Assembly: GCF_001447785.1 (NCBI RefSeq)
Contig: NW_015168044.1
Coordinates: 2,775,343-2,838,665, forward strand
Origin: Gekko japonicus
Taxonomy: Eukaryota
Reading direction: 5' to 3'
Length of the DNA: 63,323 bases
In this document: positions 14,885 to 55,950 of the stretch, one piece after another
Position numbering within the stretch: the stretch's first letter is position 1
Layout of the letters: every line of letters begins with the position of its first letter
Made by a program: the position numbers and the translations under genes
The notes under the pieces: model-generated
The model's database searches: none
What the model saw: only the letters and a program-made list of their open reading frames with translations
Told to the model about the DNA's origin: nothing

Positions 14885-15043
14885 ATGTCAGAAGCAGGCA
14901 ATGATCCTGGGAACCCTGGCTGCAGCCGGCCTACACTCTCAGCTGCACGAGGGTTAATAGGGAGGAGGACTACTGCCCCCATTACCCCTGGCCGCCTGCC
15001 TTCCATCCGCTCCCGAGATCTTACCCTTGGTGGAGTGAAAAAG
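14885..15043 (+). CDS. POLR3D: POLR3D coding exon 1
   Basis: MSEAGNDPG...DLTLGGVKK; acceptor ACAG at 14871-14874, donor GTGAGT at 15044. Confidence 0.95.
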
Positions 15044-30000: not shown

Positions 30001-33000
30001 GAATGTATATATAATTTTTGCAATATAATTTCTTTAGTCATATATCAGGCTTTTTCCCTTCTTGATGGAGAATGCATCTGTATCCATGGTGCCAAAAGAT
30101 TGAGTGAGCTCCCATCTCTGGCCCCAGCTTCTGCCAATTTAGCAGTTTGAAACCAAGAAATTGCAAGTAGATAAATAGGTACTGCTTTGGTAGGAAGGTA
30201 ACAGCATTCCATGCACCTCGGCATTTAGTCATGCCAGCCACAGGACCACAGAAACATCTTTGGACAGTGCTGGCTCTTTGGCTTGGAAACGGAGATGAGC
30301 ACCGCACCCTAGAGTCAGACTCAATTAGCTTTCGAGCAAGGGAAACCTTTACCTTTACCTTTTAGAATGTATATATAATTTTTGCAATATAATTTCTTAG
30401 TTACCTATCACAGTGTTTTTTTCCTTCTTGTTATAACAACAAAATAGCCTTGTTGCAGAATATTGGGAAAGGGATTGGAAGTAAAATTGTCTCCTTGATA
30501 CCTTTGTCTGGTGTGGCTGCATCTGGAGTACCATATAGAGTTCTGGCCATTCCAATCCCAAAATGGGCTTTATGGAATTGGAGAAGGTATAGAACTGGGT
30601 AACTGATATGACCAAAGGTTGGGATACTTTCCTAATGAGGAATGCTGAGGGCTCTTTAATTTAGGGAAAGTAACTAAGGGGGATGTGATAGAGATTTAGA
30701 TTTAGTGTGAAGACAGCAGATAGTAAAGTTCATCCTTATAAAACATTCAGGCTCCCATTTAATGAAATAAGCTGGCACTGTTCAAAAGGTGCAAAAAAAG
30801 GTTTCTTTCCATAATGCAGTTTTTTAGAATTCACAGCTGCAAGGTTTGGTGACAGCTGCTAGCCTAAGGTGGATTTAAAAAACATGAGCAAAGAGATTCG
30901 CATTCATAGACGTGTCAACTTTCATGAGAACTTTCATGTTCTGCAACACTGCACCTTTATTTTATTTTTATGCTTTTTATTTGTACTCTTTTCTTCTTCG
31001 TGTGGACCCAGAGTGGCTTATCATATTGTTCTCCCCTCCCCCAGTTTATCCTCACAATGACAACTTTGTGAGGTAAGTTAGGCTGAGAGACTGTGACAGA
31101 CCCAAAGTCCCAAGCAAGCTTTTATGACAGAGCAGAGATTCAAATAGGGGTGTACCAAGTCCTAGTCTGACATTCTAATCACTGCACTACACTACACTGA
31201 CTCTGAAACCAATGGTGGGGCAGGGGGCTATTGTCTCCATGCTCTGCTTGTAGGCTTCTTCAGAAACATTTGGCTGGTGACTACTGGGGAAAGGATGCTG
31301 GACCCTTGTTCTTATTCAGCATGATTCCTGTATCTTAGCCTAGCTAAGCTATTTTGCATCTGCGATAAGGAGCAGTCCTGTGTTTGATGTACACAGGATT
31401 TTCCTTAAAAAAAACTAGAGACATCTCTTCTCCCTGCAGCATCTCTAATGGGGTGCTTCCTGCTTATTCCTCACGGCATGCAATAATCAAAGGATGTTTT
31501 TGTTCCCACTCGCAACACAAAGTAATGGTTGGAAGCCTGAGTTGGAAGCCTCTAGTCCCAGTTCAGCTATAAACTCTCATGGTTTCAGCTCAGTCACTGT
31601 CTCTCAGGATGCTTTGGAGCCAGGAGGTTGAACTTGTCTGGCTTTTGAGTCCTTCCAGCTCTGTGGTCCTGACTGTGCCTCTTGTTCTAGTGAAAGAGGA
31701 GCCCCACGATGAAGAAGAGCCCCCACCTGCTCGCAAACCATCTCTTGCGAAGGCGCCCCCTCCCTTCCCCCAGGACGTGTCCATGGCAGAGCTGCTGCAG
31801 AAGCTGAGCTTGTGCAAGGAAGATGAGTTGCTGTTCTTGCAGCTGCCGGATACACTGCCAGGGCAGTCTCCCACCCAGGATACCAAGCCCATCAAGACCG
31901 AGGTGCAAACTGAGGATGGGCAGATGATGATGATAAAGCAAGAGAAGAGCCAGGTATGTGACTAGAGAGGAATATGTAGTCCAGGTAGAGGAAGTGGTAT
32001 CATAGAACTCGATGGACTTTCGCTGCTTATATTGCCAAACAAAGGGCCCTAGGAAGGACTCTGTCTGAAGTTCTGAAGGAGTTCAGAAAAGCTGCAGGAT
32101 GTGGTATTCGGCATGGGTGTTAGCTTTCTAAGGGCATTGGCTACTTTTAAAACAATTAACATGCCTTCTATACAAATATATATTTTGAAAGTGAGCAGGC
32201 ATTGACTGATGACAAGCAAAATGCAGAGTAATATTTTTCATTAGGACAAGCAAAAGGAGCACAACATAGAATGCAAGCTGATTGGTCCTTACAAGTTAAA
32301 AGTATTACATGGCTTTTAAAAAAATTTTTTGCTTCGGATCAACACAATTGTCTGTTTTGGGGACCTGCAGCAATTCCTCTGGCTTCTGCTGCAAGATTTC
32401 CTGTGGCAGAGGTTTCATCAGTGCCCTGATAGGTCTTGTTCTGCCCCAGGGCAAGCAGAATAAATTATGCAAAATAAGAGTTCACATACATTTAACTTAT
32501 CCTGGTCTCAGGATTCTAGCTGGGCAACTTGGGTTCATGATTTTGGTATATTAAGCACAGTGTACAAGTCATACTGATGAAAGGCCAGTAAAGGCACAAG
32601 AAACCTAGATGTCGCTTTGCATTTCTTCCCAGCTTCCCAGGACGCAAAAGGTCAGCTCCCCCCAAATATAGGAGCTGCTTGTAACCCGCCCCCGCCCCCT
32701 TTCTGTCTTTTCAGGAAGCTAAAGAAGCTGAGAACATCTGCACCCTGGGGGACCTGTCAGAAGGGCAGGTGGGGAAGCTGCTGGTCCGCAAGTCAGGGAA
32801 GGTGCAACTCGTGCTGGGCAGGGTGACCCTTGATGTGACCACAGGGACTCCCTGCTCCTTCCTTCAGGTATGGCTGGCGCAGAAAACATCTCTGTTGTAC
32901 TGTCCTAATCAAGGCAGTAGGCGGCTTTCCTTCAAAGTTCTCATCCTCTACCAGTGGGAGATGAGCAACAGCAGAGAACAGTTCTTGCCCTGCTTATGAT

Positions 33001-34489
33001 ATGGGCTTCCTGGAGGCATCTTATGGGCCCAGTGTGGGCTGCAGTAACTTGAAGGGAAACTTGGTCTGTATAACTGTAAGCAGTTAAAGTCAATTTCACC
33101 CATTACATTCTTAGAGGAACATCTGAAAAAGTGAATTGCGACTTTGGTAAATGATTAGTTGCAAATGCTTGTCTTGGACAGGTGTGCTAATCAGCCAGCC
33201 AGCATTAGTTGCAGCTCTTGGTCAAGTGTAAACTGGATGCTAAACCTGGATTTGCTGGCTGTGTAATATGTGAAATGTTCTCAAAGACACTCTTCAGTGA
33301 CTCTTAGGAGATCACTTGTATTAGAGTTCATTGAGCAGGGTACCAAACTTGTGTGTATAGTGTCAGTCGTGAAGGGGATGTGGGTGTATAAAACACACTT
33401 CGTGCCCTGATCTGGATAACCCAGGTAAGCTCGATCTTGTCAGATCTCAGAAGCTAAGCAGGGCTGACCCTGGCAAGTACTTGGAAGGGAGACCTCCAAG
33501 GAATACCAGGGCTGGGACGCAGGGGCAGGCAATAGGAAGCCACCTCTCTGAAGTGTCCAGGCCCCAATAGGGGTCACCAGAAGTCAGTCATGACTTCCAG
33601 GCATATACACATACAAACAAACACTCACCAAAAAAAATACACTTCATGCATCTGACAAAGCAGGCTCTAATCTTGCACCATGATATATCCGTCTAGGCTT
33701 CGGTGTATCATAAGAGTCTTCATTGTTCTTGTTGCAATAGATTCATACAGCCACCCTTTTGGAATCTGTTATCAAAATACATATAAATGAGGCCTTCCCT
33801 ACTCAGGCTGTTTTTCTTGGCCAATACCACAGTTTATGAATTCATAATTGACAATATCATAACTGACATAATGCATAGATGCTTATGCCCCTGTTACAAA
33901 ATGGTCTGTATGAAGTACGCTTCTCTGTCAGTAATTTGGAACAAGTTTTTTTCAAATCCCATTCGAAGCAGGAGCCTCCAAGCACTTCAAAAGATTTGGC
34001 CGCCTACCTGCCCAGTGAATCTCCATTGAGTATCCTAGGCTACTCCTAGAGAAGTCACAAGAGAAGGGTTGAGGTTTTCCTGAGGGAAAGGATAAGAATC
34101 ACTACATGCCTGTTTCCCTGTGTCCCATCATGAACTGTAAGACTGGCAGAGAAGCACCTCTGTCACCATTGTGTGTCAAGTTAGACTGTCGGGGCAGGAC
34201 AAGGGTTCTCTGCAACTAGAATTTGCTTTCTCCTAGTGGTTTATTAAGAGTCCTCGCAGGTCCACCTCTGCAGGGGAAAAAATACCCTTAGTCAACCATA
34301 GGTGTGTGTTGATTGCAGCATTACGGAGGTTTTGGTTATAACAGTGTTTTCTCTTGGTCTTGGAAGGAGCTGGTGTCAGTGGGCATTGGAGACAACAGGA
34401 GTGGTGAGATGATCGTCCTGGGCCATGTGAAGCACAAGCTGGTCTGTGCCCCAGACTTTGAGTCCTTGCTGGAACACAAGCATCGGTAA
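14885..34489 (+). CDS. POLR3D: DNA-directed RNA polymerase III subunit RPC4; spliced CDS of 8 exons, 1188 nt, 395 aa
   Basis: Exons 14885-15043, 23872-23915, 24388-24539, 26802-26926, 27327-27495, 31691-31953, 32715-32867 and 34367-34489 join in frame. Motifs RLPSIRSRDLTLGGVKK, EVIQSHSIFEQGPAE, PVQLPLAHSGWLFKEE, LLFLQLPDTLPG, GQVGKLLVRKSGKVQL and LGHVKHKLVC...KHR* match vertebrate RPC4. Confidence 0.97.
15985..16220 (-). mobile_element. 5S rRNA-derived SINE (SINE3 type) with (CA)n tail
   Basis: Reverse complement GCCCGATCTCGTCAGATCTCAGAAGCTAAGCAGGGT...AGTACTCGGATGGGAGACC follows the 5S internal promoter region, then a non-5S body. Confidence 0.85.
17413..17636 (-). mobile_element. Partial second copy of the 8129-8502 hAT/Charlie element
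   Basis: CAGGGGTGTCGAAGTCATTTGTT...GGCCAGGCCATGCGTGTCATAAAATGTAATGCCAGG is the reverse complement of that element's right end. Confidence 0.75.
18471..20421. mobile_element. About 1.95-kb non-autonomous hAT element with an internal ~180-bp repeat
   Basis: TAGGAGTGTGCA...TGCACATCCCTA termini; exact TSD GTAGGGAG at 18463-18470 and 20422-20429; internal duplicated block at about 18680-18840 and 18860-19020. Confidence 0.8.
23872..23915 (+). CDS. POLR3D: POLR3D coding exon 2
   Basis: KTFAPNIISRKIKE(E); long polypyrimidine tract plus CAG; donor GTAAGT. Confidence 0.95.
24388..24539 (+). CDS. POLR3D: POLR3D coding exon 3
   Basis: PKEDVSIKKEKKERDRDRQRDGHGRGRGRPEVIQSHSIFEQGPAEMMKKR; TAG acceptor, GTATGT donor. 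Confidence 0.95.
26330..26680. mobile_element. hAT-type MITE
   Basis: CAGGGGTT...AACCCCTG TIRs; exact TSD GGTAACAC at 26322-26329 and 26681-26688. Confidence 0.88.
26802..26926 (+). CDS. POLR3D: POLR3D coding exon 4
   Basis: (G)TWDKTVDMSDFGPSHIINIKKEKRETDEETKQILRMLEKDD; CAG acceptor, GTGAGT donor. Confidence 0.95.
27327..27495 (+). CDS. POLR3D: POLR3D coding exon 5 (GC donor)
   Basis: FLDDPGLKNDIRNKPVQLPLAHSGWLFKEE...DIPSVK; the frame requires the donor AAG|GCAGGT. Confidence 0.9.
28057..28245 (-). mobile_element. tRNA-derived SINE with CR1-like 3' end
   Basis: CATGAAACTGCCTTATACTGAATCAGACC...GAGCCATAGC; related copies at about 21030-21170, 27075-27250 and 59630-59810. Confidence 0.6.
28313..28899. 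repeat. About 281-bp imperfect tandem duplication
   Basis: GTAGCTGAGGGTTGTTGACAGGG at 28313 and 28594; the second unit carries an extra segment of about 30 bp. Confidence 0.85.
29193..30033. mobile_element. Penelope-like insertion: two 294-bp direct repeats inside ~145-bp inverted repeats
   Basis: Direct repeat starts at 29266 and 29560; 29888-30033 is the reverse complement of about 29193-29337; each unit has a CCGATGA-stem-GAAA hammerhead-like motif. Confidence 0.55.
30095..30362 (+). mobile_element. Sauria SINE
   Basis: AGATAAATAGGTAC...TTTAGTCATGCCAGCCACAGGACC...GGAGATGAGCACC...(ACCTTT)n tail. Confidence 0.8.
30470..30890 (+). mobile_element. Degraded CR1 LINE 3' fragment
   Basis: CATCTGGAGTAC...AGTTCTGG...TTGGAGAAGG...AGGGGGATGTGATAGAG...GAATTCAC motifs typical of the CR1 3' end; a similar remnant lies at about 12420-12640. 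Confidence 0.55.
31691..31953 (+). CDS. POLR3D: POLR3D coding exon 6
   Basis: (V)KEEPHDEEE...LLFLQLPDTLPGQSPTQDTKPIKTEVQ...QEKSQ; TAG acceptor, GTATGT donor. Confidence 0.95.
32715..32867 (+). CDS. POLR3D: POLR3D coding exon 7
   Basis: EAKEAENICTLGDLSEGQVGKLLVRKSGKVQLVLGRVTLDVTTGTPCSFLQ; CAG acceptor, GTATGG donor. Confidence 0.95.
33404..33637 (+). mobile_element. 5S rRNA-derived SINE, second copy
   Basis: GCCCTGATCTGGATAACCCAGG...GATCTCAGAAGCTAAGCAGGG...GGGAGACC; CA/A-rich tail; imperfect TSD AAAYACACTTCRT. Confidence 0.85.
34367..34489 (+). CDS. POLR3D: POLR3D last coding exon
   Basis: ELVSVGIGDNRSGEMIVLGHVKHKLVCAPDFESLLEHKHR-TAA; AATAAA candidates near 35501 and 36276. Confidence 0.95.
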   Translation, partial: ELVSVGIGDNRSGEMIVLGHVKHKLVCAPDFESLLEHKHR

Positions 34490-37400: not shown

Positions 37401-38185
37401 TTGCTGTTGAGAGACAAGTAGAGAATAACTTAAGGATTATTAATGGGTCAAACTGAATTTGGCAGCATCTGCTGTCACCACACCTCTAAACTGTTACCTG
37501 CATGACCGCAGTGTTTCATCTGATGGTGGCCACTAATTTGACTCTGGATTATCAGTTTAGTTCAAGGGCATTTCAGGTATCTCAATCCTTCTGTAGTTTT
37601 TGAGTAGCCAGTTTGCAATGTGTTTCTCTCTGTACAGGTATCAGCAATAGGGCTTATACTTTTATAACATGGAAGGTACTGAACATACCACGTGTATTTC
37701 TCTCAATTTGGCTGCTTCCTGGTTTCCCCACTTCTTTCAAGTGTGGATGGTTCTGCATATCTAGAAGGACCAACAACGTGCCCTTCTATAGTAGTAATAA
37801 ATGGCTAAGTGAAAAGAGGGGTGCAATACTCCAGAGAAAAGCTTTTAAATAGGGTTCATCTGTGCTAATGAGGTTGGGTTTATTGCTTGGTCCTTCACAG
37901 AGAAACTTTCTTCTCCCACTGAGTCATGTGCAACTGCAGGCGAATAGCTGGACAACGTTCTTTAAAATTGTGTATGATGTCTTGATTTCTATTTCTGTGG
38001 CCTTTAGCGCTAGATATTTTGAGAATGGCCCAGTATGGCCCACCATTTAACATAATCTCCACAGGGGCTTTAGTGCCCTTTCCAGCATTCATGGCTAGTG
38101 ACTTAGGTTCTTCCTTTTGACAAACTCCAGATCGGGAAGGTACAAAACGAAAAGTGTCCCATTTGGAAGATGTGCTGGTGGTCAC

Positions 38186-38629
38186 TCACTGTGCATGTTT
38201 ATTGGCACAAGTTGTGATGTAATGGGCCATCTCAAAAGCCTTCATGTTTAATGTTCCTCCCTGTATACCCTTCTGGCCAATCAGGATTAGGCACACAGAA
38301 TTGACCAGGACTACAGTGATGGCATGGGTGCAGCTCTCTCCATTGTCACGATAAAGCTTGGTCCGGAGATCCATACTGTATTGATGGGCATCTGTATAGA
38401 GATTATCACGTATGACGAAACACTTGAGGCCACCAAGGGTCAACCCTTGGGTAAGCAGGTTTTCTCTGTTCCTGCCAAGAAGAGCTTGGATCTCTGGCTT
38501 GGTCAGTTTCGCCAAGATGCCCCCTTGGTGGGCAGCTAAGAATTGCTGTTGAGCTACTGACAGAACTGCTGCATCCCAGCACAATCCATCTTTCATCAAG
38601 CTGTTGATGTGTTCCTGCCAGACAGTCAT
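38186..38629 (-). CDS. Divergent profilin-family protein, single coding exon, 147 aa
   Basis: Profilin motifs: N-terminal W, DG.C.DAA, GLTLGGLKCFVIRDNL, SMDLRTK, LIGQKGIQGGTLN..AFEMA. Open full-length ORF; minus-strand AATAAA at 37879-37884; pyrimidine-rich acceptor 42 nt upstream of the ATG. Confidence 0.9.
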   Translation of the reverse strand: MTVWQEHINSLMKDGLCWDAAVLSVAQQQFLAAHQGGILAKLTKPEIQALLGRNRENLLTQGLTLGGLKCFVIRDNLYTDAHQYSMDLRTKLYRDNGESCTHAITVVLVNSVCLILIGQKGIQGGTLNMKAFEMAHYITTCANKHAQ

Positions 38630-39639
38630 CTGGTGATCAAGAAGGCTTTGCAGTTAAGTCCGCCCTGCAGCCTGTTCAGAAGACGGGGAAGAGAGTTCTC
38701 CTTTGAGCTTCCCTGTGGATGTTAGGCTAATATTCCACTCCAATAATCTCCAGGTTGGACAGATGAACAGAATCTATGAAAATAGCTTTTTGTCCATCAC
38801 ACAATGTGCTTTGTCTCAAAAGAATTATTTCAAGTTAAGAGGAGGTGAGGATGCTGATGCTTGCTCATAAGTGCATTTCCTTCCAATGCTGGCAACTATT
38901 CCCAAGGGTAGCTCAAAGTGGAGGCTTCTGGATTCCCAAATCCTTCAGTAGTGTCCTCAATACCTGGTAGCTACTGAAAGCTTGGCATCTTTTCATGGAC
39001 TTTACCTTAGAAACCTGCTAGAATTTTGGTAGCAGTAAGATTCACTGGCTTTGATGTCATAAAGAGAATTTGAGCAGGTCGAGTCAATCCTTTGTGTGTG
39101 TTAGTATGATTTTCTTGATGGTCTTTGTCTGAACTTCTCACTGTGTAGTCTTCTGATGGCCTTTGTCTGAACTTCTCATTGTATTCCATACAGACAACCT
39201 GTTTACCATTCACTGGCATCTGATGTGTGATCAAACTCTCCTTCCCAGTTCGTAGGGTCGTGCAGGCTTGCCTCAATGAAGTGTGCTGAATCGCCACAGT
39301 ACATTGTGGTCCATATGGACCCAGTGTATGTCTCAGTAATTTCAGCCTTTCAGTCCATTTGTAAATCGACTAAGCTCTTTTTTTAATGCTTTATGAATGA
39401 TCCAATTTTAGGTGCTTCAGATAAAAGGAAGAATCCAGAAACCACTGACCCCTCCCATCGGCCTTCTCTTGTTTTGAAGTGAGAGACTGCACTAATAAAA
39501 AGTTACAGGCTTTTCCACTTCTGTATTTAAACATCTTGAATGCTTTATTTATGATCGCTTACTGTTTAAAGACGAAGCTGCAAAAGGAATGATCTACTAC
39601 TGCTGTAGCTTCTTAGAATGAGAGATATTGAGAAACACT

Positions 39640-39900
39640 GAGTAACACAAAGTTCTGGATTCTGGCACGGCCTAGTGGAAGAGAACCAGTAAAGAGAAGC
39701 AGATCGATGTAGAAGGTGGCTCCGCTCAGCATTACAGGGTCCGAGAAGGCGGTAGGCACAGCGGCCTGGCCCAGGCTGTAAGTGGACTGCCATGCAAGGT
39801 GTTGGCCCCTCTCTGGGTCTGGTACAATAAACAGAAAGGACGTGAGGCAGGCAGGGAAGGGGGACGCTGAGCACGGACAGCTTCCTTTGGTGGAAACTGA
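39640..39900. promoter_or_regulatory. GC/CpG-enriched patch between the divergent profilin and PARP11 ORFs; possible promoter or 5' UTR
   Basis: Local CpG enrichment directly upstream of the PARP11 ATG and about 1.1 kb upstream of the profilin ATG. Confidence 0.4.
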
Positions 39901-39933
39901 GCCTGTTGTCATCTAGATGGTTTCAAGGTGACG

Positions 39934-40905
39934 ATGAATTCTCAAAATGTGGCAAGTCAATTTGAAGAAATGGATACATCTGACACCCAGTGGGGATGGT
40001 TTTACTTGGCTGAATGTGGGAAATGGCATATGTTTGACACTGATTCCAGTACTCACTGTTCAGTTAGCACAGAAGACATTGAAAGGAGCTTCAGAATGAA
40101 TCCACAGGGCTCTGTTTGCTTCACAAGCGCAAAATTTACTTACACATTAGACTTTTCAGGGATGAAGCAGACCAACCTAACAACTGGAAAACAACGTCCC
40201 ATAAAACGGGCTCCATTTTCCATCACTGCTTTCAGTTATGTCTGCGAAAACCAGTCTATCCCTATACCTTCACACTGGGAGAATGTAAACTCTGAAGAAC
40301 CTTACCAGCTTATTCCTTTGCAAAAGCAGACAAAAGAGTATAAAGATGTTGCTAGTCTTTTTGGGAAAACAATGGAAGGCAGTTGGATTAAAGGAATACA
40401 GAGAATTCAGAATCTAGACTTGTGGGAATTTTTTTGCAGGAAAAAGAATCAGTTAAAGAAGAAAAGAGGCGTCTCTTTCATTAATGAACATATGTTGTTT
40501 CATGGCACCAGTGGCGAGTTTGTGGAAGCCATCTGCATTCATAACTTTGACTGGAGAATCAATGGCATGCATGCTGCTGTATATGGAAAAGGGACGTATT
40601 TTGCTAGGGATGCATTGTATTCGAGCCGCTTCTGCAAAGACGACATGAAGCACAGCAGTACGTTTCAGATTCATGGTGTTGATCTGCAACTTCATATGTT
40701 CAGGAAGCATAAAGTGATGTTTCTTGCTCGCGTATTGACTGGAGACTATATTACTGGGGACTCAAAATACGTGAGGCCACCTTCAAAAGATGGGAGCTTT
40801 GTAAATCTGTATGACAGTTGTGTGGACAACACATGGAATCCGAAGATTTTTGTTGTCTTTGATGCCAACCAGATCTATCCGGAATATTTAATAGAGTTCA
40901 GCTGA
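39934..40905 (+). CDS. PARP11: Protein mono-ADP-ribosyltransferase PARP11 (WWE + PARP catalytic domain), intronless, 323 aa
   Basis: MDTSDTQWGWFYLAECGKWHMF (WWE), RIQNLDLWEFFCRKK, MLFHGT, YGKGTYFARDA, YDSCVD..WNPKIFVVFDANQIYPEYLI match PARP11 end to end. H-Y-I catalytic triad retained; no internal stops; first ATG at 39934 (the track starts at GTG 39928). Confidence 0.95.
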   Translation: MNSQNVASQFEEMDTSDTQWGWFYLAECGKWHMFDTDSSTHCSVSTEDIERSFRMNPQGSVCFTSAKFTYTLDFSGMKQTNLTTGKQRPIKRAPFSITAFSYVCENQSIPIPSHWENVNSEEPYQLIPLQKQTKEYKDVASLFGKTMEGSWIKGIQRIQNLDLWEFFCRKKNQLKKKRGVSFINEHMLFHGTSGEFVEAICIHNFDWRINGMHAAVYGKGTYFARDALYSSRFCKDDMKHSSTFQIHGVDLQLHMFRKHKVMFLARVLTGDYITGDSKYVRPPSKDGSFVNLYDSCVDNTWNPKIFVVFDANQIYPEYLIEFS

Positions 40906-41471
40906 GACTTCGGGGGGGCAGATCAGTTGTATTCACCCCCTTTATTTCAGGTGGCCAATTACTTCTTGTAAAGAAAAGTTCTTTAGCAGGTTTAAAAAAA
41001 AAGAAAAGAGAAGCAGATCCAGCAATATGCTTTAATGTTGTCCTTTTTATTTCTAGTTATACTACTTCATATGTGCAGTTGGTTGCTAACCACAGAATTA
41101 AAGAAACCCTCTCTTTGCTGGTGATTTCCTTTGCACTTTTGCACTAAATGGCTCCCTCCCCTAAAGAAAAGCTGTGCCATTTTCCTTGTACATACATATT
41201 CCTTGTTCTTTATTAACATCTCCAACCCCTCTCATTTGACATAAAACCTTCCTCCCTTCCGAGTGTCCTTCACTTCCACCCTACCCCACATCCCATCCGT
41301 GTGTTTCAGCCCAGTTTCCCTTGCTCCCATCTATGCAGCCAGTGCCTTTCAGTCTCCACCTCAGCCTTTACTTCGAAGCTAGTAAAAAAGCAGGGAATCA
41401 TCAGCATAAATCCCTGCCTTTCCATACTGGGTTTGATGATCTTCAATGTATTGGCTTAGTAGGCCAGAAGT

Positions 41472-41598
41472 TCAGTCTAAAGCAAGTTTTTTCAGAGCTG
41501 ACGTGGCAGATGCAGCTCCCTTGGACTCTTTCATCTTCTCTAGGGCAAGCAGAAGGTCAAGCTGGGTAAGTGGCCGTAGCTGTTCCTCTTCCAGGTCA
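41472..41598 (-). CDS. atad1a: atad1a-like last coding exon
   Basis: (S)[44 protein letters not shown]; minus-strand AATAAA at 41209-41214. Confidence 0.9.
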
Positions 41599-44500
41599 CT
41601 GGACATGGACACACACATGGACACACACAAAAGAAAAACCAGACAGGGCTCATGGAATAATGTTTGAAATAAGGTAAGAACTTCTCAGCTTCCTGAGTTT
41701 TCTTGACCATGAGTCCTTTGCATTTGCAGTTACTAAAGATAATGTTTTTGCCAATGCCCTTCATTGCAGCTGCAGCATCTACCCACACCCTGTTTGTTTG
41801 AATATGTGCCATTTTTAGAACTGCAAAGTAGAAGAGAAGTGGCAGTATAATTATGTGACTCTCTCATTAATTTCAAGAGGAGATTATCACGTTCTTGCAA
41901 GTCATGCCAGTAAGGCATCATTTAGCAATCCTTGGGGTAGAAGACATATCAAGTAACCATAACCTGAATGATACCATTGGTTCCCCCAGCTCTTCATTGT
42001 CTCCTATGATTGGCAACAGCTCTTCAGGGTCTCGGTCAGAGAAAGGTGTCCTTTAAGTGGAGATGCCAAAATGTTCTACAGGCAAATCATCTACTTCAGG
42101 AAGCAGTATCCTACCTTACTACTGTACCATATTCATCTCTGTTCGCATGGACCTATGAACATATGAAGATGCCTTAGGCCAAGGCCTTCTTTCCCTCCCC
42201 CCCTTCCGCATTTTTGGCTTTGAGTTCCTTCTCCCCCTGCCCAGAAAATGGCCAGGTAGTCCAGAACCAGGATACAAAATGTACAGGATGCCATCTTGGA
42301 TCTCTTTATTCTGGTTCTCTTAGTTTTTATCAAATTGTAAATTGAATTGTACTGTTTTGTATATTTTTACGGCATTATGCCCCCCTCCCCCCGTACATCA
42401 GCCAAAGCCCAGCATAATTGGGGACAGGGCGATTAACAAATTGAACTAAGAATAATAGTACTAATATTGGCCCGCTTAGCTTAGTGTTGTCTACCCCTCT
42501 TGGCAGTGGCTCTCCAGCATCACAGGCAGAAAAAGATATTTGCTAGCACTTGAGGCCCTTTTTGTAGTGAGTGGGGATAGAACCTAAGAAGTGTAAAACG
42601 TGCTCTACCTCCCATAGTGCATCATGGCTCTTCCCATGTGGTGTTGCTGAAAGCCTGGGCCACAGAGGAAGAATCCTTGCTTCAGTTTCTTCCTGTACTA
42701 ATGTTGCTCCAGTACCAAGATGAGACAACAGCTTGACCTCCCACCATGTGGCCTTAAATCTCTACCATTATCTAGAAAACAAGGCTGGACAGATGAAGGT
42801 TTGTTACATATTTCATGATGTCAAAAGCTGATGAATCTAGGGAACTGGGGTCCAGCGGCTTCTGGCGACAGTGCCAGGAAAGGTCAGGTGCAAGGAGAGA
42901 AGGGCTGTGGGATGAACAAAGGCTCACCTGTCCTCCTCGCTGTCTGTATCGTGGAGCATCTGTGCAATCTGCTTCATCTGCTGCCTGCGAACATAATCGC
43001 GTACCCTGTGCATGGCAGCATCCCGGCACAATTCTCGCAGGTCGCTGCCCGAATAACCATTTGTTTTCTCAGCCATCTCCTTCAGGTCCACAGCATTGCT
43101 TAGCTGTTCCAAGAGCAAAATTCCCCTCAGAGTTATAATGGTTGGCCCATACTTGCTCCCTGCACTGTCACAGCGTTGCTACACCTAGGCAGAGGGTCAG
43201 GTCTTCCTGCTTCCCTGTTCTGCCTTCTAAGGAATGAAAAACTTCTCATTAATCTTTTGGCCCTTCCTCCTCCTACTGAACCCTTATGCTCTCAGCAGGC
43301 ACAAAATGAGTGGCGATATGATCTTAAGGGTTTAGATTCCACACTTCAAAATCAGGCTGACCTCACAGATACTCCCTCTCTGCTGGGGACCTTGAGAAAT
43401 GTAGTTCTGTGAGAGGAGTGAGTGATCTTTAACAAAATTCTCAGTACTCATCATGTGTCCACATTTTCTTTGTGAAGGAAGTTCACTTAATTTTTTTCAG
43501 GCCTAAATTCCCTGGATTCCTTTAGAGGCTGAGTTATTTGAACTCTTAAGGGATTTTTTCCTTTGTTAGTGTTAGCACATGAGCTTTGTTTTAATGTTGT
43601 AAAATAACTGGTAGTTATTTGTACTTTTTGATTCTAACATCATTTTTGTAGTTTTAATGTTATGTGCTGCTTTGAAACCAAAACAGTGCCTAACAAAAAT
43701 ACCTGCAAATATATCAATTACAGTTCCTGGGACTCTTCTGGGAAAACTTATATACATTTGTGAGATAGACTTTTCAAATCTATAAAAGTATTCTTGACCA
43801 ATACTGTTGTGTTCCCCGCTATCCAATCTAGTTTACGGTTTATCTCTGTCTGGTGAAGCTACAGTTCTGAAACAGAAAGGGGAAGCTGGGGGGGGGAGCA
43901 AGACTCACATTTTCTCCAGACAAAATGAGTTTCAGAATATCCTGCCGTTGCCTCTGTGTCTGAAGAAGACAGAAAAGAGCATGGGATTGAGAGACTATTA
44001 GAACTGGAGGCTGAGAAAATAATGACAAGCTAATATTTTTGCTGAGTCCCTAGAGTATGCAGAAACCTGCATTTGGTCTGTGAGTAGCCTTGTTTTGTTG
44101 TCCTGCTGCTTGAGAGTAAACTTGATGTTGCTGTGCCTGTTGAAAGGAGTGATACTGCTTCTATACTAGAAGGCTCCATTTAGTTATCATTACTAATAGG
44201 TCTCCCAGTGGCTTTCATTAACTGTTCTTAAAATTCCAGTTGTCATGACCATCGCCTGTTTTTACACCAGGCAAGCCTCCTAATTAGGCTTGCTCAGGGG
44301 ACATGGGAGAAAGAGGCAAGATTGGATTTTGTCACTGCAGATGGAGGAACATGAGGAATCCTTCCGTAAGTTAAAAATGCCCTGCAAATAGAACACAAGC
44401 AGAGCAGGGGGGCAGGTCCTTTGTCTCTGCTGGACTAGTTTTCGCATTGATTTTTTGTTTCATGCAAAGGAACATACAAAATAAGAGTCGATTTGCTGTA

Positions 44501-47500
44501 GTTTGAAGAGGTGTTGTCCATTCTACTACCTCATCCTCCTGCATATGTGGCATTTTAAAATGTGTGTGTTGACTATCCCTTGAAGTGAATGTATGATCTT
44601 GTCCTTGGAGCTGTCAATTTTGGTCCACCATTTCTGTTGCTTGGAATTATTTTTATCCTGATTTGTCTGATTTTTCTAGATGGGGGCTGCTTCTTAAACA
44701 ACATCCCAGATACGTGCAATTGTTTTTATTATTATTATTATTATTCTTAAGGGTTTCTCCCTATTAATTGCTTATAGCAGGATGAACAATTCTTTTAATG
44801 CCAGGGAAAGCAGATTTTTAGAGGAACTTAGCGTCAAGAAAACCATTTGAAGGAAACAGATTTTTGAGTCTGAGCCTTGCAAGCTTAATATTGGGCAGCT
44901 TTAGGAGGGAATAAGTCTGGATGGTGACTGGATTTAGGGGAGAGCAGTAAAATTTACTTACAGGCAGACCAATCTGGAAGGTTGTGGGCATCCTCCGCAG
45001 GATGGCAGGATCCACATCTTGGGGCCTATTGCTTGCTCCCAGCACCATCACCTGGAATGCAACAAAGCGGCTAGTTAGATTGTCACCTGATAAAAGAAAT
45101 GTTAGTTGATTAACTGCATGAGATTTGACTGCTGCATGAGATTTGACTGATGCTCAATTTGCATATGCTTGTATGTGGATATAACAAAAGGTCTTTGTGT
45201 TTGACTAGGATACTGGAAAACTGTATAGAGATCCCCACTCAGTAGCAAAGCTCAGGCAGGGCTAAAAATGGGGATTTGTATATTGGTCTCTCCCCAGTTA
45301 CAGCCCAACACTCTAAACCCAACACCACAGTGGCTCTCTAAGTCATCACTGTCCAGGGAAGGGGAATTTAGCAGGCCAGGGAAGAAGTTACCAGCCATTT
45401 GGGCTTTGCCCTCACAGCTGATCAGTGTAAATGTAATAAGATGGTGTCAGGGCTGGAACCTGACCCCTTGTGAGAGCTGGAGTTCCCACAAGAAGCCGGG
45501 ACAAACAGCGAGGCATGTGCAGTGTGCCAGGCCTTCTTCAAAAGGGTGAGGGAGGCTGGCCAAGGAGGGCAATTTACCCTCTTGTTACTGGCTGTGTGGA
45601 CAGGCGCCAAAGGAAGGGAGTCGGAGGAGGGTGCTGTAAATGCTCTCCAAGATAGAATTACCAACACTGGGTTGGGAAATTCCTGGAGATTTTGGGAGCG
45701 GTGCAACAGAGGAAAAGGCAGGAAAAATTACAGCTGATGGAGGAAAGTGTGCACAAAGCTGCCATGCGGATATTCAGTTGCCTTGCTCTGCCTTGCTTCG
45801 TGTCATCTCAACCAACGGCTTCCTGGTAAGTGGTACCTGGCAATTGGGTCCAGTTTCCAGCCCATCCCAAAGGCTCATGAACTCTGCTTTCATCATAGCT
45901 GTGGCTTCATGATCAGCATCGGAGCGGTTCCTCAGGAAGGCATCTGCCAAGAGGGATAAAAAGAATGGCTCAGCATTGGACTTCTGTCCTTCTCTGCACT
46001 GGCATCTACTTCCACTCCACTAGCACCTTGAAAACATTTTTCTCTTTTGACCTAACCTAAATCTTACATTTTCTTTTCAACAGAAATCATGAAATGCAGC
46101 CAGTAGGAGTGTTCAAAAGTCTACTTGTGTCTCCTGTTATAAGATCCCACATTTCTGGCTGTCCTGAATCTCTTTGTGGAACAGGCAGCAAAGGTGCTAC
46201 TGGAAAGTTGGTTGCAATGGGAAGGTGTTCCATTCACATTTGGAGAATCTGAAATCTCTCAAGTGAGAGAGGATCTCACAGAACTGCATAAGGGGATATT
46301 ATAAGCTGCCTTCATTTCAGACTTGCTTGCATGTCTAGCAACTAACATATCCTAATGAGAGGAGCAAAGACTGCCATCTTTAAGAAGCCTGGGGATAAGA
46401 TATCAGGAGCTAATGCAAGTGTACAAAGGTAGGCAGCATCCAGTGTTCACCCAGTCAGCTGAAGCCCATCCTTATTGCCACAATTCCATACATATGCCTA
46501 TTATTTGGTGGGCATTTTGCTAAATTTTCAGTCGGTTTCAGGCCTGCACAGCTTCTTGCAAATACTTGCTGATGAAGCATGAAATGCAGGTTTAACTCTC
46601 AGCCCAATTACAGACTTGATTTAAATCCATTCCTTCCTTTCCCTCAGCATCAGTGTTTCCGTCAGCATAAGAGGAATACTTGCAATACTTTAATGATTTG
46701 CCTTTAGATTCAAGAATATGGTGCAATCTGAAATCCATCCTGTTCTTTAAATTCTCCAAACCACACTAAATCTTTCTCTCTATAAAAGGTGTTCATATTG
46801 CAAACATTACACATGAGTTATCCCTTGGTCACTTTACTGCAACAACAACAAAAAAGGTAAGGGTTTCACTTGATCAAACGAACACTGACCTAGCACAGTG
46901 GTCTGCTTACAACAATGGCACTTCTAGGAAGCCCCTGAGCAAGACCCCAGTACAAGGAAGAACTCAGCATTGTGTTGGGATAAAGGGGCTGAGATGCAAC
47001 AGAGTTGCATAAAAAATACCCAGTTATCATTTTTAGCAAAGGACTGTAACTGGCATCCTCACTACACATTAATATACAACGCAAAGATAATAAATACATT
47101 CAGCTGTGTGATTAAACTTGGGTCTGCCCCAGTCATGTCTGGGGAAAGGACACATTTACTACATTATGGGTTTTTCTGCATGTCTAATATTTATCGCTTC
47201 TGTGCCCATACTGTGTCATTGGGATTTTTTTTGTTTTTGCTTTCAAAATGTTCACAAATAAACAGGAGATGCAGTGATGAAATACCAAAGTGATCACTAG
47301 AGGATGCAAAACACTTGTGGAGAAGGAAAAAAAAACAACAACCTGAGGCAACACAGGCACACAAACAAGGGTAACAGGCGCAGAAAAGCCCTGAGAAAGG
47401 AGAAAGGTGGGTGGGCCTAGAAACAGTCTAGGTAAATCAGTAAACAAGCCCTGCCCTCATTCATGATAGTCTGTCCCCTCGCAGGGCTCTTTTTTTTGCT

Positions 47501-50500
47501 TTCAAAATGTTCACAAATAAACGGGAGATGCAGTGATGAAATACCATATTGATCACTAGAGGATGCAAATCACTTGTGGAGAAGGAAAAAGGATTGGCTA
47601 CATTAGGGATGTGTCGCCTAATATGTAGAGGAGTTCCTGCTACAAAAAGGCGGCTTCAGGTACTTTTCTCCTTTATCAAATTCTGCTCCCAGAACAAAGC
47701 TGGGATGTGAAAAAAGTGCTTGTGAGGAGAGACTGTGGTGACGCAAGAAGCAAGCCAGAGGAGGGTGCAGCTCCCTTCACCTACATGTTCCATTTCTTTC
47801 AAGCTATAACTTTCCCCCTTGTTAACTATTAAAAAGATATAACTATAATTGGGGAAATGAAAGAGCAGGCAGGGATGTAGAAATTACCTATTTCATCTAT
47901 GAAAATGATGCAGGGTTGGATCTTGGTTCCCAAGGAGAAAACTGCAGCCGTGAGCTTCTGTGACTCTCCATACCATTTGTCAGTCAAGGTAGAGGCTTGC
48001 AGGTTTATGAACCTGCATCCCGATGCCTGGGCTGTTGCTTTGGCAAGAAGGGTTTTGCCACAGCCAGGAGGACCATAAAGCAAAACACCTGGTGCAAGGA
48101 GAAACTCATTAATTCTCAGTCTCCCCCCTTCCTTGCCAGGCTTTATTCCCCCCCCCATTGTTTTTTTTGCTTGTGTGAAAAAGGAACGTTCTTCACATGA
48201 GACTTCAGTAGAAGAGAGCAAGCATCCAGTAGCATCTTAAAGACTAACAACAGTTGTGGTAGGGTATGAGCTTTCATGAGTTACTGCTCACCTCTTCAGA
48301 TACCACCTTGCTTTATCAGTATGAGACTCCAGTGAGTGTTTAATGAAACCTGCACCAATCTTAACATACAAATGTGACTCATATACTGCAGCTGGTACAA
48401 CCTGACTGCTTACAGTCCAAGGTAAGCAGCAAAAGCAGAAGCGTTATGTTTCTGTAAAGCTAGGATTTTTTTATTTATTGCTCTGTTCAACACACCTACA
48501 TGGTTCAAAAATGTCCAGTTCCTTTTTCATGGGGCTACTGATAACAATTTAAAATTTGATAATTTTTTCTCTAGTGGAACAACAAAGATTTTTTTCTTCA
48601 AATGCATGTGATAAATAATGAGTTTAAGTTTAAATAATCTTTCATAAATGTGGTTATACTGGGTTTAAATTGAATGTTTATTATTTAAATATTTAAAGTA
48701 CCTTTCATAAGTGTTGATACATTGGGTTTAACTTGAATGTTCATTTACTTGAATCCTGTTTTAATGCAGATTTCAAATATGGAAATATAGATATCACCTT
48801 TATCTTTAAAGAAATAATGCCCACTCAAATTTTGTTAATACAACAGAACACCTGTTAACATTCCACTTCACAAAGTATTGGAGGCAAACACTTTTTATAC
48901 TGCAAATGCAGAACTGACTCTGTATCCATGCAGACATACTGTGAAACAGTTTTACCTTTCTCCTTCCTAGCTAGCTCTCATAACTGTTTGGGAGAAGACT
49001 ATCATTCTCAGAAAACTGCTGGGTATTTATTAAGCTGCCATTAAGTAAGGAGCTTTACACCCCTCTATCCATCACTCCTTGGGATCTAGGCTCCAGCAAA
49101 TGAGTGGAGGCAGATCCTGTCAGAGGTCCAGAAAGGCTTTTGAGGCCCTTAGCCATTAAAAGAAACCTTAGTTGTGAAACGTATCAGCCAAAAAATAAAT
49201 GTCTTGAGGTCCCTTTGAGTCTGATGCCAAATGGCCCTCCCTCTGACTGGCTGTGAATGGGGTTTTTAAAAGAGGCAAGTCTGAGAAAAGGTACTGAGTG
49301 ATTTATGACTGGCTCTTCTCCAAGGTGTACCTCGTGGGGGTTGGCAGAGCCTGGAGTGATGGAACAAGTGCCTCTGCTGGAAAGGCAGGATCACTGTGTC
49401 CTGAAGTTCGCTGACCACTTCATCCAGGCCCGCGATATCCTTCCAAGAGACCTGAAAATGGAACAGCATTTGGAGCCTTCAGAGATAACAAGAGGACTGT
49501 AAGCTACCTGGCAAGGGAAGCCAAATGCTGCATGCTGGCATTTCAGATTTTGGAATTGGCATGTATTCATCCCTTGCATGGTGATGGAGTTCCATTAATT
49601 ATATGTAAAAAATTCATTTCCATTTTCATTCAATTCATTTTCAGATTTTTGCAATCTCATATCTGCTGATAGCTTTATCCCCCTTTACTCCCACCTTGAA
49701 AACTCTCTAGTCTTCATCAGGGGGAACAGCAAGCTCCCCTTCTTACTTGTATGTCCTTCGGGTCCACCAAGTGAGCTGCGATGTTCATCTCATGTTCTGT
49801 AAGCTTCACTCCTTCTACTCCAATCTGCTTCATCAAGCGTTCTGCCTGCAGAAAAAAGACAACGGGTTCAGGTCCCACTCTTGCCCTGTGGCTGGCTCAG
49901 TCAACACAACCTTTCATTATGGTTCTTCCTAGCTGTTTATTTACACCTGAAACTACTAGAATATGCACAGATTGTAATAGGTTAAACTGCAGTATAGCAA
50001 AACTCCACCCCCATTCTTTCTTTCTAGTGTATTTGGAAGATTTTGTATCACGCGATACAGTCAGAGACTGTATGGGAAACAGTTGGACCATTTTATCATG
50101 TTCCCCGAATACAGTTTTGGTAGCTACCCATTATCTCCAGATTCAACACTTGTCAGCAGTGACCAGGGGTGTAGTCACACGGTCCATCTGATCGGGGTTC
50201 ACCACTGTTCTCTCTCGCATTTAAATTTTCTATTCACATGTGCCAATCGGCCTCCTGTGCCGAAGCAGGCTCACTCCCTAAATGCTCCCGGGTTTTCCTG
50301 CCCCCAGGGAAAATCAAGTATTTTCCTGGCACTTGCGCTTTGAATGTGCGATTTTGCCCATCTGGACAGCCATCTTTTGCAATTATTGTGATTAGGGCCG
50401 CTCTGACCACTCTGTGCGATTTTTTTTTTAACTTTCTGGCTTTGAGTGCTTGAGTAAACAAGTGCTCATCCTGCTTGGAGAAAAGCCCTGCCCGCCGTCC

Positions 50501-55379: not shown

Positions 55380-55950
55380 ACGGTCAGGTTGTGGGTCTTT
55401 GCACGCAAGTTTCGTACAACCCAACATTTCCTTTGTGGCACCTTAAAGGCGACCAGATCTGTCGTGGGGTAAGCCTTCTCGGACAAGAGGTTCCTGCATC
55501 AGGTGCAGCAGGACCTGATTCTTCCCAGCACAAAGGAATTCCGATCACCTTCAAAGGGACAAACGCCCGCACCGTCGCCGGGGGTTGCTGATCGTGGTAC
55601 TGAATTGGCATGCAGCGACGCGCCAGGAAGGCACAGTTTTCTGCTACTCTTCCCTTAGAGAGGAAACGCTAGACAACTCACCCATTCAGCGCCGCAGCTC
55701 CATCCCCGACGCTCCAGCCGGGAAAACACCCCGTATAGAAACAAGAGCTGCGAGAAAATCTGTCCTCCCGGCTTTTTTTCTGCACGGTGCATTTTTGCAC
55801 AGAAGGTTTAAATCAGGTTTAAATTAGCACAAGGTTTATAAAACCAATGTAAACGGGTGAGAATGGATGTTGCTCCTGCATTCTAACAGAACAATGTCAT
55901 GATCATGGACGACAACGGCCGCGGCCAGATTAAACTGTGGCCGCCAGAGT
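55380..55950 (-). promoter_or_regulatory. atad1a: CpG-rich promoter and probable non-coding first exon of the atad1a-like gene
   Basis: CpG cluster about 3 kb upstream of the ATG; minus-strand donor TGG|GTGAGT at 55682/55681; acceptor TTTAG ahead of 52786. Confidence 0.6.

What the first reader, a model, noticed from the sequence alone, without database searches (positions are those of the whole stretch)
38186..40905. Head-to-head module of two intact intronless genes (divergent profilin + PARP11) between POLR3D and atad1a
Seen: two single-coding-exon ORFs diverge across about 1.3 kb, with a CpG patch between them and no recognisable transposon, in an otherwise repeat-rich, intron-rich window. 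Established: in mammals POLR3D is followed by PIWIL2; mouse PARP11 (nuclear-envelope mono-ADP-ribosyltransferase) and the intronless PFN3 both act in spermatid head shaping; retrogenes often gain testis expression from bidirectional promoters. Inference: this may be an undescribed co-regulated germ-line gene pair, possibly with ADP-ribosylation acting on an actin/ARP-profilin pathway.
Basis: partly seen in the sequence, partly recalled or inferred. Interest (0 to 1): 0.8.

Follow-up and report, generated by a model that had tools for sequence, protein, structure and literature searches.

The report
PARP11 retrocopy beside a PFN5-type profilin
In this gecko window an old, conserved intronless profilin gene of the PFN5 type has a recently inserted, still-intact processed copy of PARP11 next to it, so the head-to-head pair comes from a retrotransposition event and is not shown to be a co-regulated module.

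Summary
Both ORFs are real and intact. One is a 147-aa profilin (38186-38629, minus). The other is a 323-aa WWE+PARP protein (ATG 39934 to 40905, plus). They lie head-to-head between POLR3D (plus, 14885-34489) and an ATAD1-type gene (minus, 52749-41472).

The PARP11 ORF is a LINE-type processed retrocopy. It has no introns. It carries a 228-nt 5'UTR, an 88-nt 3'UTR and an A9 tail. It is bracketed by an exact 15-bp target-site duplication (39691-39705 and 41005-41019; none expected by chance). The true spacer has background CpG (0.23).

The ancestral start codon (39917) is frameshifted, and the ORF now starts at a downstream ATG. The H-Y-I catalytic residues are intact.

The profilin is not undescribed. 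It is annotated as "profilin-2-like" in squamates, turtles and alligator. It falls in a strongly supported tetrapod clade with mammalian Pfn5, which is intronless and testis-specific in mouse and a pseudogene (PFN5P) in human. That clade is separate from PFN1, PFN2 and PFN3.

The pairing can be no older than the insertion. Co-regulation is untested, and the retrocopy's expression and function are unknown. Overall this is a clean but ordinary retrocopy.

The parts
38186..38629 (-). PFN5-clade profilin, complete CDS in one exon (147 aa plus stop)
   Evidence: ORF. Pfam PF00235 at 7.7e-18. PDB PFN2 at 2e-29. Orthologues at 65-94% identity in squamates, turtles and alligator start at the same Met. 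Clade support 98/98, including mammalian Pfn5-type rows.
37879..37884 (-). Candidate AATAAA polyadenylation signal of the profilin gene, about 300 nt after its stop
   Evidence: Motif scan. Its use as a signal is inferred.
38630..39690 (.). True spacer, i.e. the pre-insertion upstream region of the profilin. It has no CpG island and no repeat hit.
   Evidence: CpG o/e 0.23 overall and 0.11 in the 370 bp next to the profilin ATG. No intra-window similarity. No Pfam hit for its ORFs.
39691..39705 (+). 5' target-site duplication AAAGAGAAGCAGATC
   Evidence: Exact 15-mer found only twice in the window, with 0 expected in 100 shuffles. It extends to 17/18 identity over 39688-39705 versus 41002-41019.
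39706..39933 (+). Retrocopied 5'UTR of PARP11 mRNA.
   Evidence: It lies between the 5' TSD and the CDS. GC 0.575, 8 CpG, o/e 0.45. Its origin from the parental 5'UTR is inferred from position, because no parental sequence was available.
39917..39931 (+). Ancestral PARP11 start codon, now frameshifted into a 4-codon uORF (MVSR*)
   Evidence: Shifting by one base, 39921-39941 reads FQGDDEF. This matches the canonical gecko N-terminus MFQGGDEF.
39934..40905 (+). PARP11 retrocopy ORF (323 aa plus stop) with complete WWE and PARP catalytic domains
   Evidence: Pfam WWE covers 1-67 of 67 positions and PARP 1-197 of 199. PDB PARP12 catalytic domain 5e-52 and PARP11 WWE 1.6e-41. Identity is 95% to Gekko and Heteronotia PARP11. 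H190, Y222 and I305 are kept.
40906..40993 (+). Short retrocopied 3'UTR with only a weak AAGAAA signal at 40971
   Evidence: Sequence and motif scan.
40994..41002 (+). Poly(A) tail remnant (A9), directly abutting the 3' TSD
   Evidence: Sequence.
41005..41019 (+). 3' target-site duplication AAAGAGAAGCAGATC
14885..34489 (+). POLR3D (RPC4), eight coding exons, convergent with the profilin
   Evidence: Exon ORFs. Pfam RNA_pol_Rpc4 at 3e-16. PDB RPC4 at 3.5e-32. Searched exon by exon only.
41472..52749 (-). ATAD1-type AAA ATPase gene, nine coding exons. Its stop lies 452 bp from the 3' TSD.
   Evidence: Exon ORFs. Pfam AAA 1.4e-21 and AAA_lid_3 3.4e-15. PDB ATAD1 at 1e-34. Exon 49720-49896 hits only ATAD1, at 9e-10. 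Minus-strand AATAAA at 41046 and ATTAAA at 41031.

Best explanation
Two unrelated histories are superimposed here.

(1) The profilin (38186-38629, minus) is an old, conserved, single-exon gene of the PFN5 clade. That clade is tetrapod-wide (amphibians, reptiles, mammals) and distinct from PFN1, PFN2 and PFN3. The gene keeps the profilin fold signature and the actin-contact motifs (VIRD, DLRTK, GG.LN.KAFEMA). Like the rest of its reptile clade, it lacks the Trp31-type poly-proline-binding residue. By analogy with mouse Pfn5 it is probably a testis-biased actin-monomer-binding protein; this step is inferred.

(2) The PARP11 ORF is a processed retrocopy. A spliced PARP11 mRNA (228-nt 5'UTR, full CDS, 88-nt 3'UTR, poly(A)) was reverse-transcribed by a LINE (L1-type) machinery at a GT/AAAG nick. 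It was inserted 1,076 bp upstream of the profilin ATG and about 450 bp beyond the ATAD1-type stop codon, creating a 15-bp target-site duplication. This step is shown by the sequence.

Before the insertion the order was POLR3D (plus), then profilin (minus), then ATAD1-type (minus). The head-to-head arrangement and the CpG patch are by-products of the insertion.

Since insertion the copy has lost its ancestral start through a frameshift, but it keeps a 323-codon ORF with intact WWE, PARP and H-Y-I features. It brought no promoter of its own. Any expression must therefore come from the profilin-side spacer or from read-through.

Whether it is a working retrogene or a young, not yet decayed pseudogene is open. 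I put this at about 45:55.
For: Retrocopy hallmarks: an exact 15-bp direct repeat (17/18 over 18 bp) brackets the unit, occurs nowhere else in the window, and is expected 0 times by chance. An A9 run abuts the 3' copy. The ORF is colinear with PARP11 proteins from genes annotated with several splice isoforms. Isoform break points near CSVS/TEDIE and DLWEFFC mark introns in the parental gene.

Species signal: identity follows the species tree, at 95% to Gekkonidae, 91% to Eublepharis, 82-87% to other squamates and 76-78% to mammals.

CpG patch: all clustered CpGs (39723-39874) lie inside the insert, while the spacer is at background.

Start codon: the ancestral ATG at 39917 is out of frame, and shifting by one base restores FQGDDEF.

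Profilin: orthologues occur in squamates, turtles and alligator. The clade has 98/98 support, is separate from PFN3 (100/99) and PFN2 (98/98), and contains rodent rows. Those rows reciprocally best-hit reptile members and match the published mouse and dog Pfn5 peptides. Pfn5 is intronless and testis-specific in mouse.

Flanks.
Against: There is no canonical AATAAA before the A-run, only AAGAAA at 40971, and the tail is just 9 nt. The source transcript may therefore have used a weak or proximal site, or been internally primed.

The parental PARP11 of this genome was not available. The assignment of 39706-39933 to its 5'UTR, and the two inferred indels, rest on protein alignments only.

Both frame-breaking indels sit in the first ~10 codons while the other ~310 codons are clean. 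The amino-acid rate is not clearly raised, at 10 versus 6 changes against Gekko. This pattern hints at purifying selection, i.e. that the copy may be functional.

The age of the insertion is poorly bounded. An exact 15-mer only argues against a very old event.

Orthology of the gecko profilin with X-linked mammalian Pfn5 rests on phylogeny, not synteny.
Confidence: 0.8

Rival explanations
1. The two genes form a co-regulated germ-line pair driven by a shared bidirectional promoter in the 1.3-kb interval. The PARP11 copy would be a functional testis retrogene acting with the profilin in spermatid shaping.
For: The orientation is head-to-head. The PARP11 ORF is intact with H-Y-I kept. Frame-breaking indels are confined to the extreme N-terminus and there is no clear rate acceleration. 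The retrocopy has no promoter of its own, so the profilin-side spacer is its most obvious source of transcription. The profilin's mammalian relative Pfn5 is testis-specific.
Against: The arrangement was created by a secondary insertion. The CpG patch is retrocopy 5'UTR, and the real spacer has no CpG island (o/e 0.23, and 0.11 next to the profilin). The ancestral start codon is lost and a uORF precedes the new ATG. No expression data and no other genome could be examined. A biochemical link between PARP11 and profilin has no support in the data.
Confidence: 0.13
2. This is the genuine PARP11 locus, or a DNA-level duplicate of it, that has lost all its introns.
For: There is a full-length CDS with an orthologue-like identity pattern.
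Against: A poly(A) tail and target-site duplications mark exactly the mRNA-sized unit. The neighbours are POLR3D and ATAD1-type genes, not the usual PARP11 neighbourhood (the latter from general knowledge). A DNA duplicate would keep its introns.
Confidence: 0.03
3. This is an assembly artefact: cDNA or transcript contamination spliced into the genome assembly.
For: An intronless mRNA-like unit sits in an intron-rich region.
Against: A duplicated 15-bp genomic target on both sides, and an A-tail of only 9 nt, are signatures of in vivo target-primed reverse transcription and not of chimeric assembly. There is no N gap near the junctions.
Confidence: 0.03

Closest known systems
LINE-1-mediated processed retrocopies (retrogenes and processed pseudogenes) of vertebrate genes
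   Same: It is an intronless copy of a multi-exon gene. It includes UTRs and ends in a poly(A) tract. It is flanked by a 15-bp target-site duplication that starts at an A-rich, TT/AAAA-like site (GT/AAAG). It carries no promoter of its own.
   Different: The tail is very short (A9) and there is no canonical AATAAA. The ORF is still open over 323 codons although the ancestral start is lost. Its age and expression are unknown.
PARP11 (ARTD11), a WWE-domain mono-ADP-ribosyltransferase
   Same: It has the WWE plus PARP catalytic architecture and the H-Y-I triad. It is 95% identical to gekkonid PARP11, and it includes the PARP11-specific loop that PARP12 lacks.
   Different: It is not at a spliced PARP11 locus. 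The N-terminus is remodelled (MNSQ... where the canonical protein has MFQGGDEFPQ...). It has private changes R>W and R>G in the otherwise conserved GSRIKRIQ stretch.
Pfn5 (mouse profilin family member 5; human unitary pseudogene PFN5P), Mudge et al. 2019, PMC6886504
   Same: It has a single-exon CDS and full-length profilin homology closest to PFN2. It falls in the same strongly supported clade as the rodent Pfn5-type proteins. It shares motifs such as RDNLYT, MDLRTK and LN.KAFEMA.YI.
   Different: The gecko gene lies between POLR3D and an ATAD1-type gene, whereas PFN5P is on human chrX. It is 147 aa without the ~8-residue N-terminal extension of the mammalian proteins. Identity to them is 42-49%. 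Expression is unknown.
   Same: It is an intronless profilin.
   Different: PFN3 forms a separate clade (100/99). The frog Discoglossus has both a PFN3 and a member of the window's clade, so this gene is not PFN3.
CpG-island bidirectional promoter gene pairs
   Same: The two ORFs are in divergent orientation about 1 kb apart.
   Different: There is no CpG island in the spacer. One partner arrived by retroposition. TSSs and co-expression are unknown.

Membership tests
Processed (LINE-mediated) retrocopy | Lacks the introns of the parental gene | tested here: met
   One uninterrupted ORF is colinear with full-length PARP11 proteins. Annotated isoforms of other geckos break at CSVS/TEDIE and after DLWEFFC, marking introns in the parental gene.
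Processed (LINE-mediated) retrocopy | 3' poly(A) tract at the end of the copied mRNA | tested here: met
   An A9 run at 40994-41002 lies 88 nt after the stop and directly abuts the 3' repeat. The tract is short.
Processed (LINE-mediated) retrocopy | Target-site duplications flanking the unit | tested here: met
   15/15 exact (17/18) at 39691-39705 and 41005-41019. These are the only two copies in the window, with 0 expected.
Processed (LINE-mediated) retrocopy | Polyadenylation signal upstream of the tail | tested here: inconclusive
   There is no AATAAA or ATTAAA. Only the weak variant AAGAAA is present at 40971, 23 nt before the A-run.
Processed (LINE-mediated) retrocopy | A separate intron-containing parental gene in the same genome | not testable with these tools
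PARP11 (WWE mono-ART) | WWE domain followed by a PARP catalytic domain | tested here: met
   Pfam WWE 2.6e-16 and PARP 1.5e-32. PDB PARP11 WWE at 1.6e-41.
PARP11 (WWE mono-ART) | H-Y-I catalytic triad | tested here: met
   H190, Y222 and I305 are conserved in the alignments with PARP12 structures and PARP11 orthologues.
PARP11 (WWE mono-ART) | Ancestral initiation codon and N-terminus | tested here: not met
   ATG 39917 is out of frame and reads as the uORF MVSR*. The ORF starts at ATG 39934.
PARP11 (WWE mono-ART) | Mono-ADP-ribosyltransferase activity and nuclear-envelope localisation | not testable with these tools
   This needs expression and assay.
Profilin / PFN5 clade | Profilin domain over the full length | tested here: met
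   PF00235 covers 3-123 of 127 positions at 7.7e-18. PFN2 structures match at 2e-29.
Profilin / PFN5 clade | Groups with Pfn5 and not with PFN1, PFN2 or PFN3 | tested here: met
   A clade of amphibian, reptile and rodent rows has support 98/98, while PFN3 (100/99) and PFN2 (98/98) lie elsewhere. The rodent rows match the printed mouse and dog Pfn5 peptides, by eye only.
Profilin / PFN5 clade | Single-exon CDS | tested here: met
   The complete CDS, from the shared Met to the stop, is in one ORF.
Profilin / PFN5 clade | Conserved synteny with mammalian Pfn5 (X-linked) | not testable with these tools
   The gecko flanks are POLR3D and an ATAD1-type gene, while PFN5P is at chrX:64.4 Mb. No other genomes were accessible.
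Profilin / PFN5 clade | Testis-specific expression | not testable with these tools
   Reported for mouse only.
Bidirectional-promoter gene pair | Shared CpG-island promoter between divergent TSSs less than 1 kb apart | tested here: not met
   The spacer 38630-39705 has CpG o/e 0.23. The patch (o/e 0.45) is inside the retrocopy. The distance from the retrocopy's 5' end to the profilin ATG is 1,076 bp. TSSs are unknown.
Bidirectional-promoter gene pair | Arrangement conserved across species, with co-expression | not testable with these tools
The TSD shows that the arrangement cannot predate the insertion.

The most novel reading that the evidence does not exclude
In gekkonid geckos a young PARP11 retrocopy has been captured by the upstream region of the testis-type PFN5 profilin. 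It would be transcribed divergently from that region as a functional germ-line mono-ADP-ribosyltransferase retrogene. Its ORF would be kept open by selection, which would explain why frame-breaking indels occur only in the dispensable first ten codons.
Probability: 0.13. Interest if true: 0.5.

Novelty: new member of a known kind. Interest (0 to 1): 0.3.

Why it matters
The finding separates observation from story. The pair looks like a designed module, yet a 15-bp target-site duplication shows it is an insertion event, and the supposed promoter CpG patch is cargo.

Two modest points have wider use. First, the Pfn5 family was described in 2019 as a mammalian retro-insertion with a human pseudogene. 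Here it appears to have amphibian and reptile members, so it would be an old tetrapod profilin paralogue. Second, the locus offers a clean natural test of whether a promoterless retrocopy landing upstream of a probably testis-biased gene becomes expressed.

If the copy proves to be transcribed and constrained, it would be a lineage-specific duplicate of a spermiogenesis enzyme.

Tried and rejected
I therefore could not look for an empty site, check synteny or find the parental gene.

Exact look-up of both proteins found neither in the collection.

PFN3 orthology for the profilin was tested and rejected by the tree.

A relative-rate test for relaxed constraint on the PARP11 copy gave 10:6 against Gekko (not significant) and 9:2 against Heteronotia. 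Gekko against Heteronotia is also 7:2, so the result is uninformative.

Matching the retrocopy's upstream frames to the N-terminal extensions of other species' PARP11 isoforms gave no convincing match.

No transposon-like domains or intra-window repeats were found in the spacer. No Rfam family or notable tandem repeat lies in the locus.

The bacterial promoter and terminator scanner, and the phage, plasmid and E. coli collections, were not used because they do not apply to a vertebrate locus.

POLR3D and the ATAD1-type gene were searched exon by exon, by reference.

The human PFN5P translation printed in a paper's supplement was only read and was not put into any tool. The four N runs (6061-6070, 11417-11511, 18273-18298, 62693-63177) were left as they are.
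Full report
OBSERVATION. Both ORFs exist as described. The minus-strand ORF 38186-38629 encodes 147 aa. It has a full-length Profilin domain (PF00235, 7.7e-18) and best solved-structure matches to PFN2 and PFN1 (2e-29 to 1e-25). The plus-strand ORF was listed from a GTG at 39928, but its real start is ATG 39934, and it runs to the stop at 40905 (323 aa). It has a complete WWE domain (2.6e-16) and a complete PARP catalytic domain (1.5e-32). It matches the PARP11 WWE structure (1.6e-41) and the PARP12 catalytic domain (5e-52). The two start codons are 1,304 bp apart, in divergent orientation.

FLANKS. I searched the flanking genes exon by exon, by reference. I did not build or search a joined spliced model. 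POLR3D (RPC4) has eight coding exons on the plus strand, from ATG 14885 to the stop at 34487-34489. Support comes from Pfam RNA_pol_Rpc4 at 3e-16 and PDB RPC4 at 3.5e-32. An ATAD1-type AAA ATPase has nine coding exons on the minus strand, from ATG 52749 to the stop at 41472-41474. Support comes from AAA at 1.4e-21 and AAA_lid_3 at 3.4e-15, and ATAD1 at 1e-34. Exon 49720-49896 hits ATAD1 only, at 9e-10. The best PARP11 hits are Gekko japonicus and Heteronotia binoei (95%), then Eublepharis (91%), so the window comes from a gekkonid gecko.

THE PARP11 ORF IS A PROCESSED RETROCOPY. A direct repeat brackets the ORF: 39688-39705 and 41002-41019 match at 17 of 18 positions, with an exact 15-mer AAAGAGAAGCAGATC at 39691-39705 and 41005-41019. 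This 15-mer occurs nowhere else in the 63-kb window, even allowing one mismatch, and none is expected in 100 shuffles. The 3' copy is immediately preceded by an A9 run (40994-41002), which lies 88 nt after the stop codon. The 5' copy lies 228 nt before the ATG.

The unit 39706-41001 therefore has the anatomy of an mRNA (5'UTR, CDS, short 3'UTR, poly(A)) flanked by target-site duplications. The target (GT/AAAG) resembles the L1 endonuclease consensus TT/AAAA; that consensus is from established knowledge. The CDS is colinear with full-length PARP11 proteins from genes that are annotated with several splice isoforms. Isoforms of Heteronotia and Sphaerodactylus diverge at CSVS/TEDIE and after DLWEFFC, which marks introns in the parental gene that are absent here. 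One weak point remains. There is no AATAAA or ATTAAA before the tail, only AAGAAA at 40971, so the source transcript used a weak or proximal site or was internally primed.

THE CpG PATCH IS CARGO. The CpGs at 39723, 39742, 39750, 39762, 39841, 39865 and 39874 all lie inside the insert. The segment 39706-39933 has GC 0.575 and CpG o/e 0.45, which is below island criteria. The true spacer 38630-39705 has o/e 0.23, against a window mean of 0.22. The 370 bp next to the profilin ATG have o/e 0.11. The patch is best read as the remnant of the parental CpG-rich 5'UTR. The spacer has no similarity to anything else in the window, and its ORFs have no Pfam match.

STATE OF THE COPY. Gecko PARP11 proteins begin MFQGGDEF(P/S)QNVAS. 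In the window the corresponding ATG is at 39917, but it reads ATG GTT TCA AGG TGA (MVSR*). Shifting by one base, 39921-39941 reads FQGDDEF. The ancestral start has therefore been disconnected. By protein-guided inference this took a +1 change right after the ATG and a -2 change about 24 nt later. The ORF now begins at a downstream ATG (39934), which has A at position -3.

The remaining ~310 codons have no stop or frameshift. H190, Y222 and I305 (the H-Y-I triad) are kept. The relative-rate counts are 10 private replacements against 6 for Gekko (outgroup Eublepharis; not significant) and 9 against 2 for Heteronotia. Gekko against Heteronotia is also 7 against 2. Two private changes, R>W (TGG, as expected from CpG decay of CGG) and R>G, fall in the conserved GSRIKRIQ stretch.

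The data fit either a very young neutral copy or a constrained retrogene. The clustering of both indels in the first ten codons hints at constraint. An exact 15-bp TSD argues against a very old insertion but bounds the age only loosely.

THE PROFILIN IS AN OLD GENE OF THE PFN5 CLADE. The word search found proteins of 143-148 aa at 66-94% identity. They are named profilin-2-like or profilin-1-like in Rhineura, Podarcis, Ophiophagus, Sceloporus, Phrynosoma, Varanus, three turtles and Alligator. All start at the same Met, so the CDS is complete in one exon and the gene predates the split of squamates, turtles and crocodilians.

The exhaustive search and naming of representatives allowed a tree. 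The window's protein sits in a clade of squamates, turtles, alligator, two amphibians (Discoglossus, Pleurodeles) and rodent proteins (Octodon, Perognathus, Neotoma), with support 98/98. PFN3 (100/99), PFN2 (98/98) and PFN1 lie elsewhere. Discoglossus has both a PFN3 and a member of this clade, so the gene is not PFN3. The rodent rows have reptile members as their best non-rodent hits, at 42-50% identity.

Mudge et al. 2019 (PMC6886504) described mouse Pfn5 as a novel, intronless, profilin-2-like gene with testis-specific RNA, and human PFN5P on chrX as its unitary pseudogene. The mouse and dog Pfn5 peptides printed in their supplement are plainly the same gene as the Octodon and Perognathus rows. 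That comparison was by eye only; nothing from the paper was put into a tool.

The window's divergent profilin is therefore a PFN5-clade member. It keeps the actin-contact motifs (VIRD, DLRTK, GGTLN.KAFEMA). Like its reptile relatives, it lacks the Trp31-type poly-proline-binding residue, and it has His where PFN1 has Tyr6. I infer that it retains actin binding and has altered poly-proline binding. Synteny with the X-linked mammalian gene could not be tested.

RECONSTRUCTION. Before the insertion the order was POLR3D (plus), profilin (minus), ATAD1-type (minus). About 1.5 kb separated the ATAD1-type stop from the profilin ATG. Candidate ATAD1-type polyadenylation signals (minus-strand AATAAA at 41046 and ATTAAA at 41031) lie just beside the insertion point. 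The retrocopy landed there in the opposite orientation. This produced the head-to-head picture. It brought no promoter, so if it is transcribed, the profilin-side spacer is the likeliest source.

VERDICT. A conserved, CpG-promoter-driven, undescribed gene pair is not supported. In terms of novelty, this is a new member of a known kind (a processed retrocopy) lying next to a member of a recently named but little-studied profilin family.

As a result, no other gecko locus, no parental gene and no nucleotide-level dN/dS could be obtained. No contig was taken for human, and the N runs were left untouched.

Noticed in passing
window 38186-38629 and proteins P0139, P0141, P0018, P0142: The Pfn5 family was published as a mammalian retro-insertion with a human pseudogene. 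In my tree it forms one well-supported clade (98/98) with amphibian and reptile 'profilin-2-like' genes, which suggests a much older, tetrapod-wide paralogue. No bird member turned up in the searches.
   Followed up: partly
window 41020-41474: The retrocopy's insertion point lies only 452 bp beyond the ATAD1-type stop codon. It is right beside minus-strand AATAAA (41046) and ATTAAA (41031) signals. The insert may therefore sit at or within the 3' end of that gene's transcript, in antisense orientation.
   Followed up: partly
window 16103-16221 (-) and 33408-33520 (+): Two weak 5S rRNA matches (about 44 bits against a gathering score of 38) lie inside POLR3D introns. They are more likely 5S-derived SINE heads than 5S genes.
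   Followed up: no
window 224-589 (+) and 62175-62540 (-): Nearly identical 122-aa ORF fragments (RIDSFE.WCWRRLLRVPWTARRSNQSILKEINPDCSLEG...) occur in opposite orientation at the two ends of the window. From memory they look like the C-terminal tail of an RTE/BovB-type LINE ORF2. They had no Pfam hit.
   Followed up: partly
window 4101-5050, 11601-12250, 55401-55800: These are the only CpG-island-like stretches in the window (o/e 0.66-0.85). Those at 11.6-12.25 kb and 55.4-55.8 kb are placed to be the POLR3D and ATAD1-type promoters. The one at 4.1-5.05 kb has no assigned gene.
   Followed up: no
window 8976-9488, 28424-28900, 47187-47655: Local duplications are visible as repeated ORF peptides: GRCQHTLGGLVARIHGFWWG... 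twice, ASYVIKNIGNPDYATFHAYVVEPRLL... twice, and [28 protein letters not shown] twice.
   Followed up: no
window 39770-39790: A GTAAGT splice-donor-like motif lies inside the retrocopied 5'UTR (GGCTGTAAGTGG). It could be chance, or a trace of an incompletely spliced source transcript.
   Followed up: no
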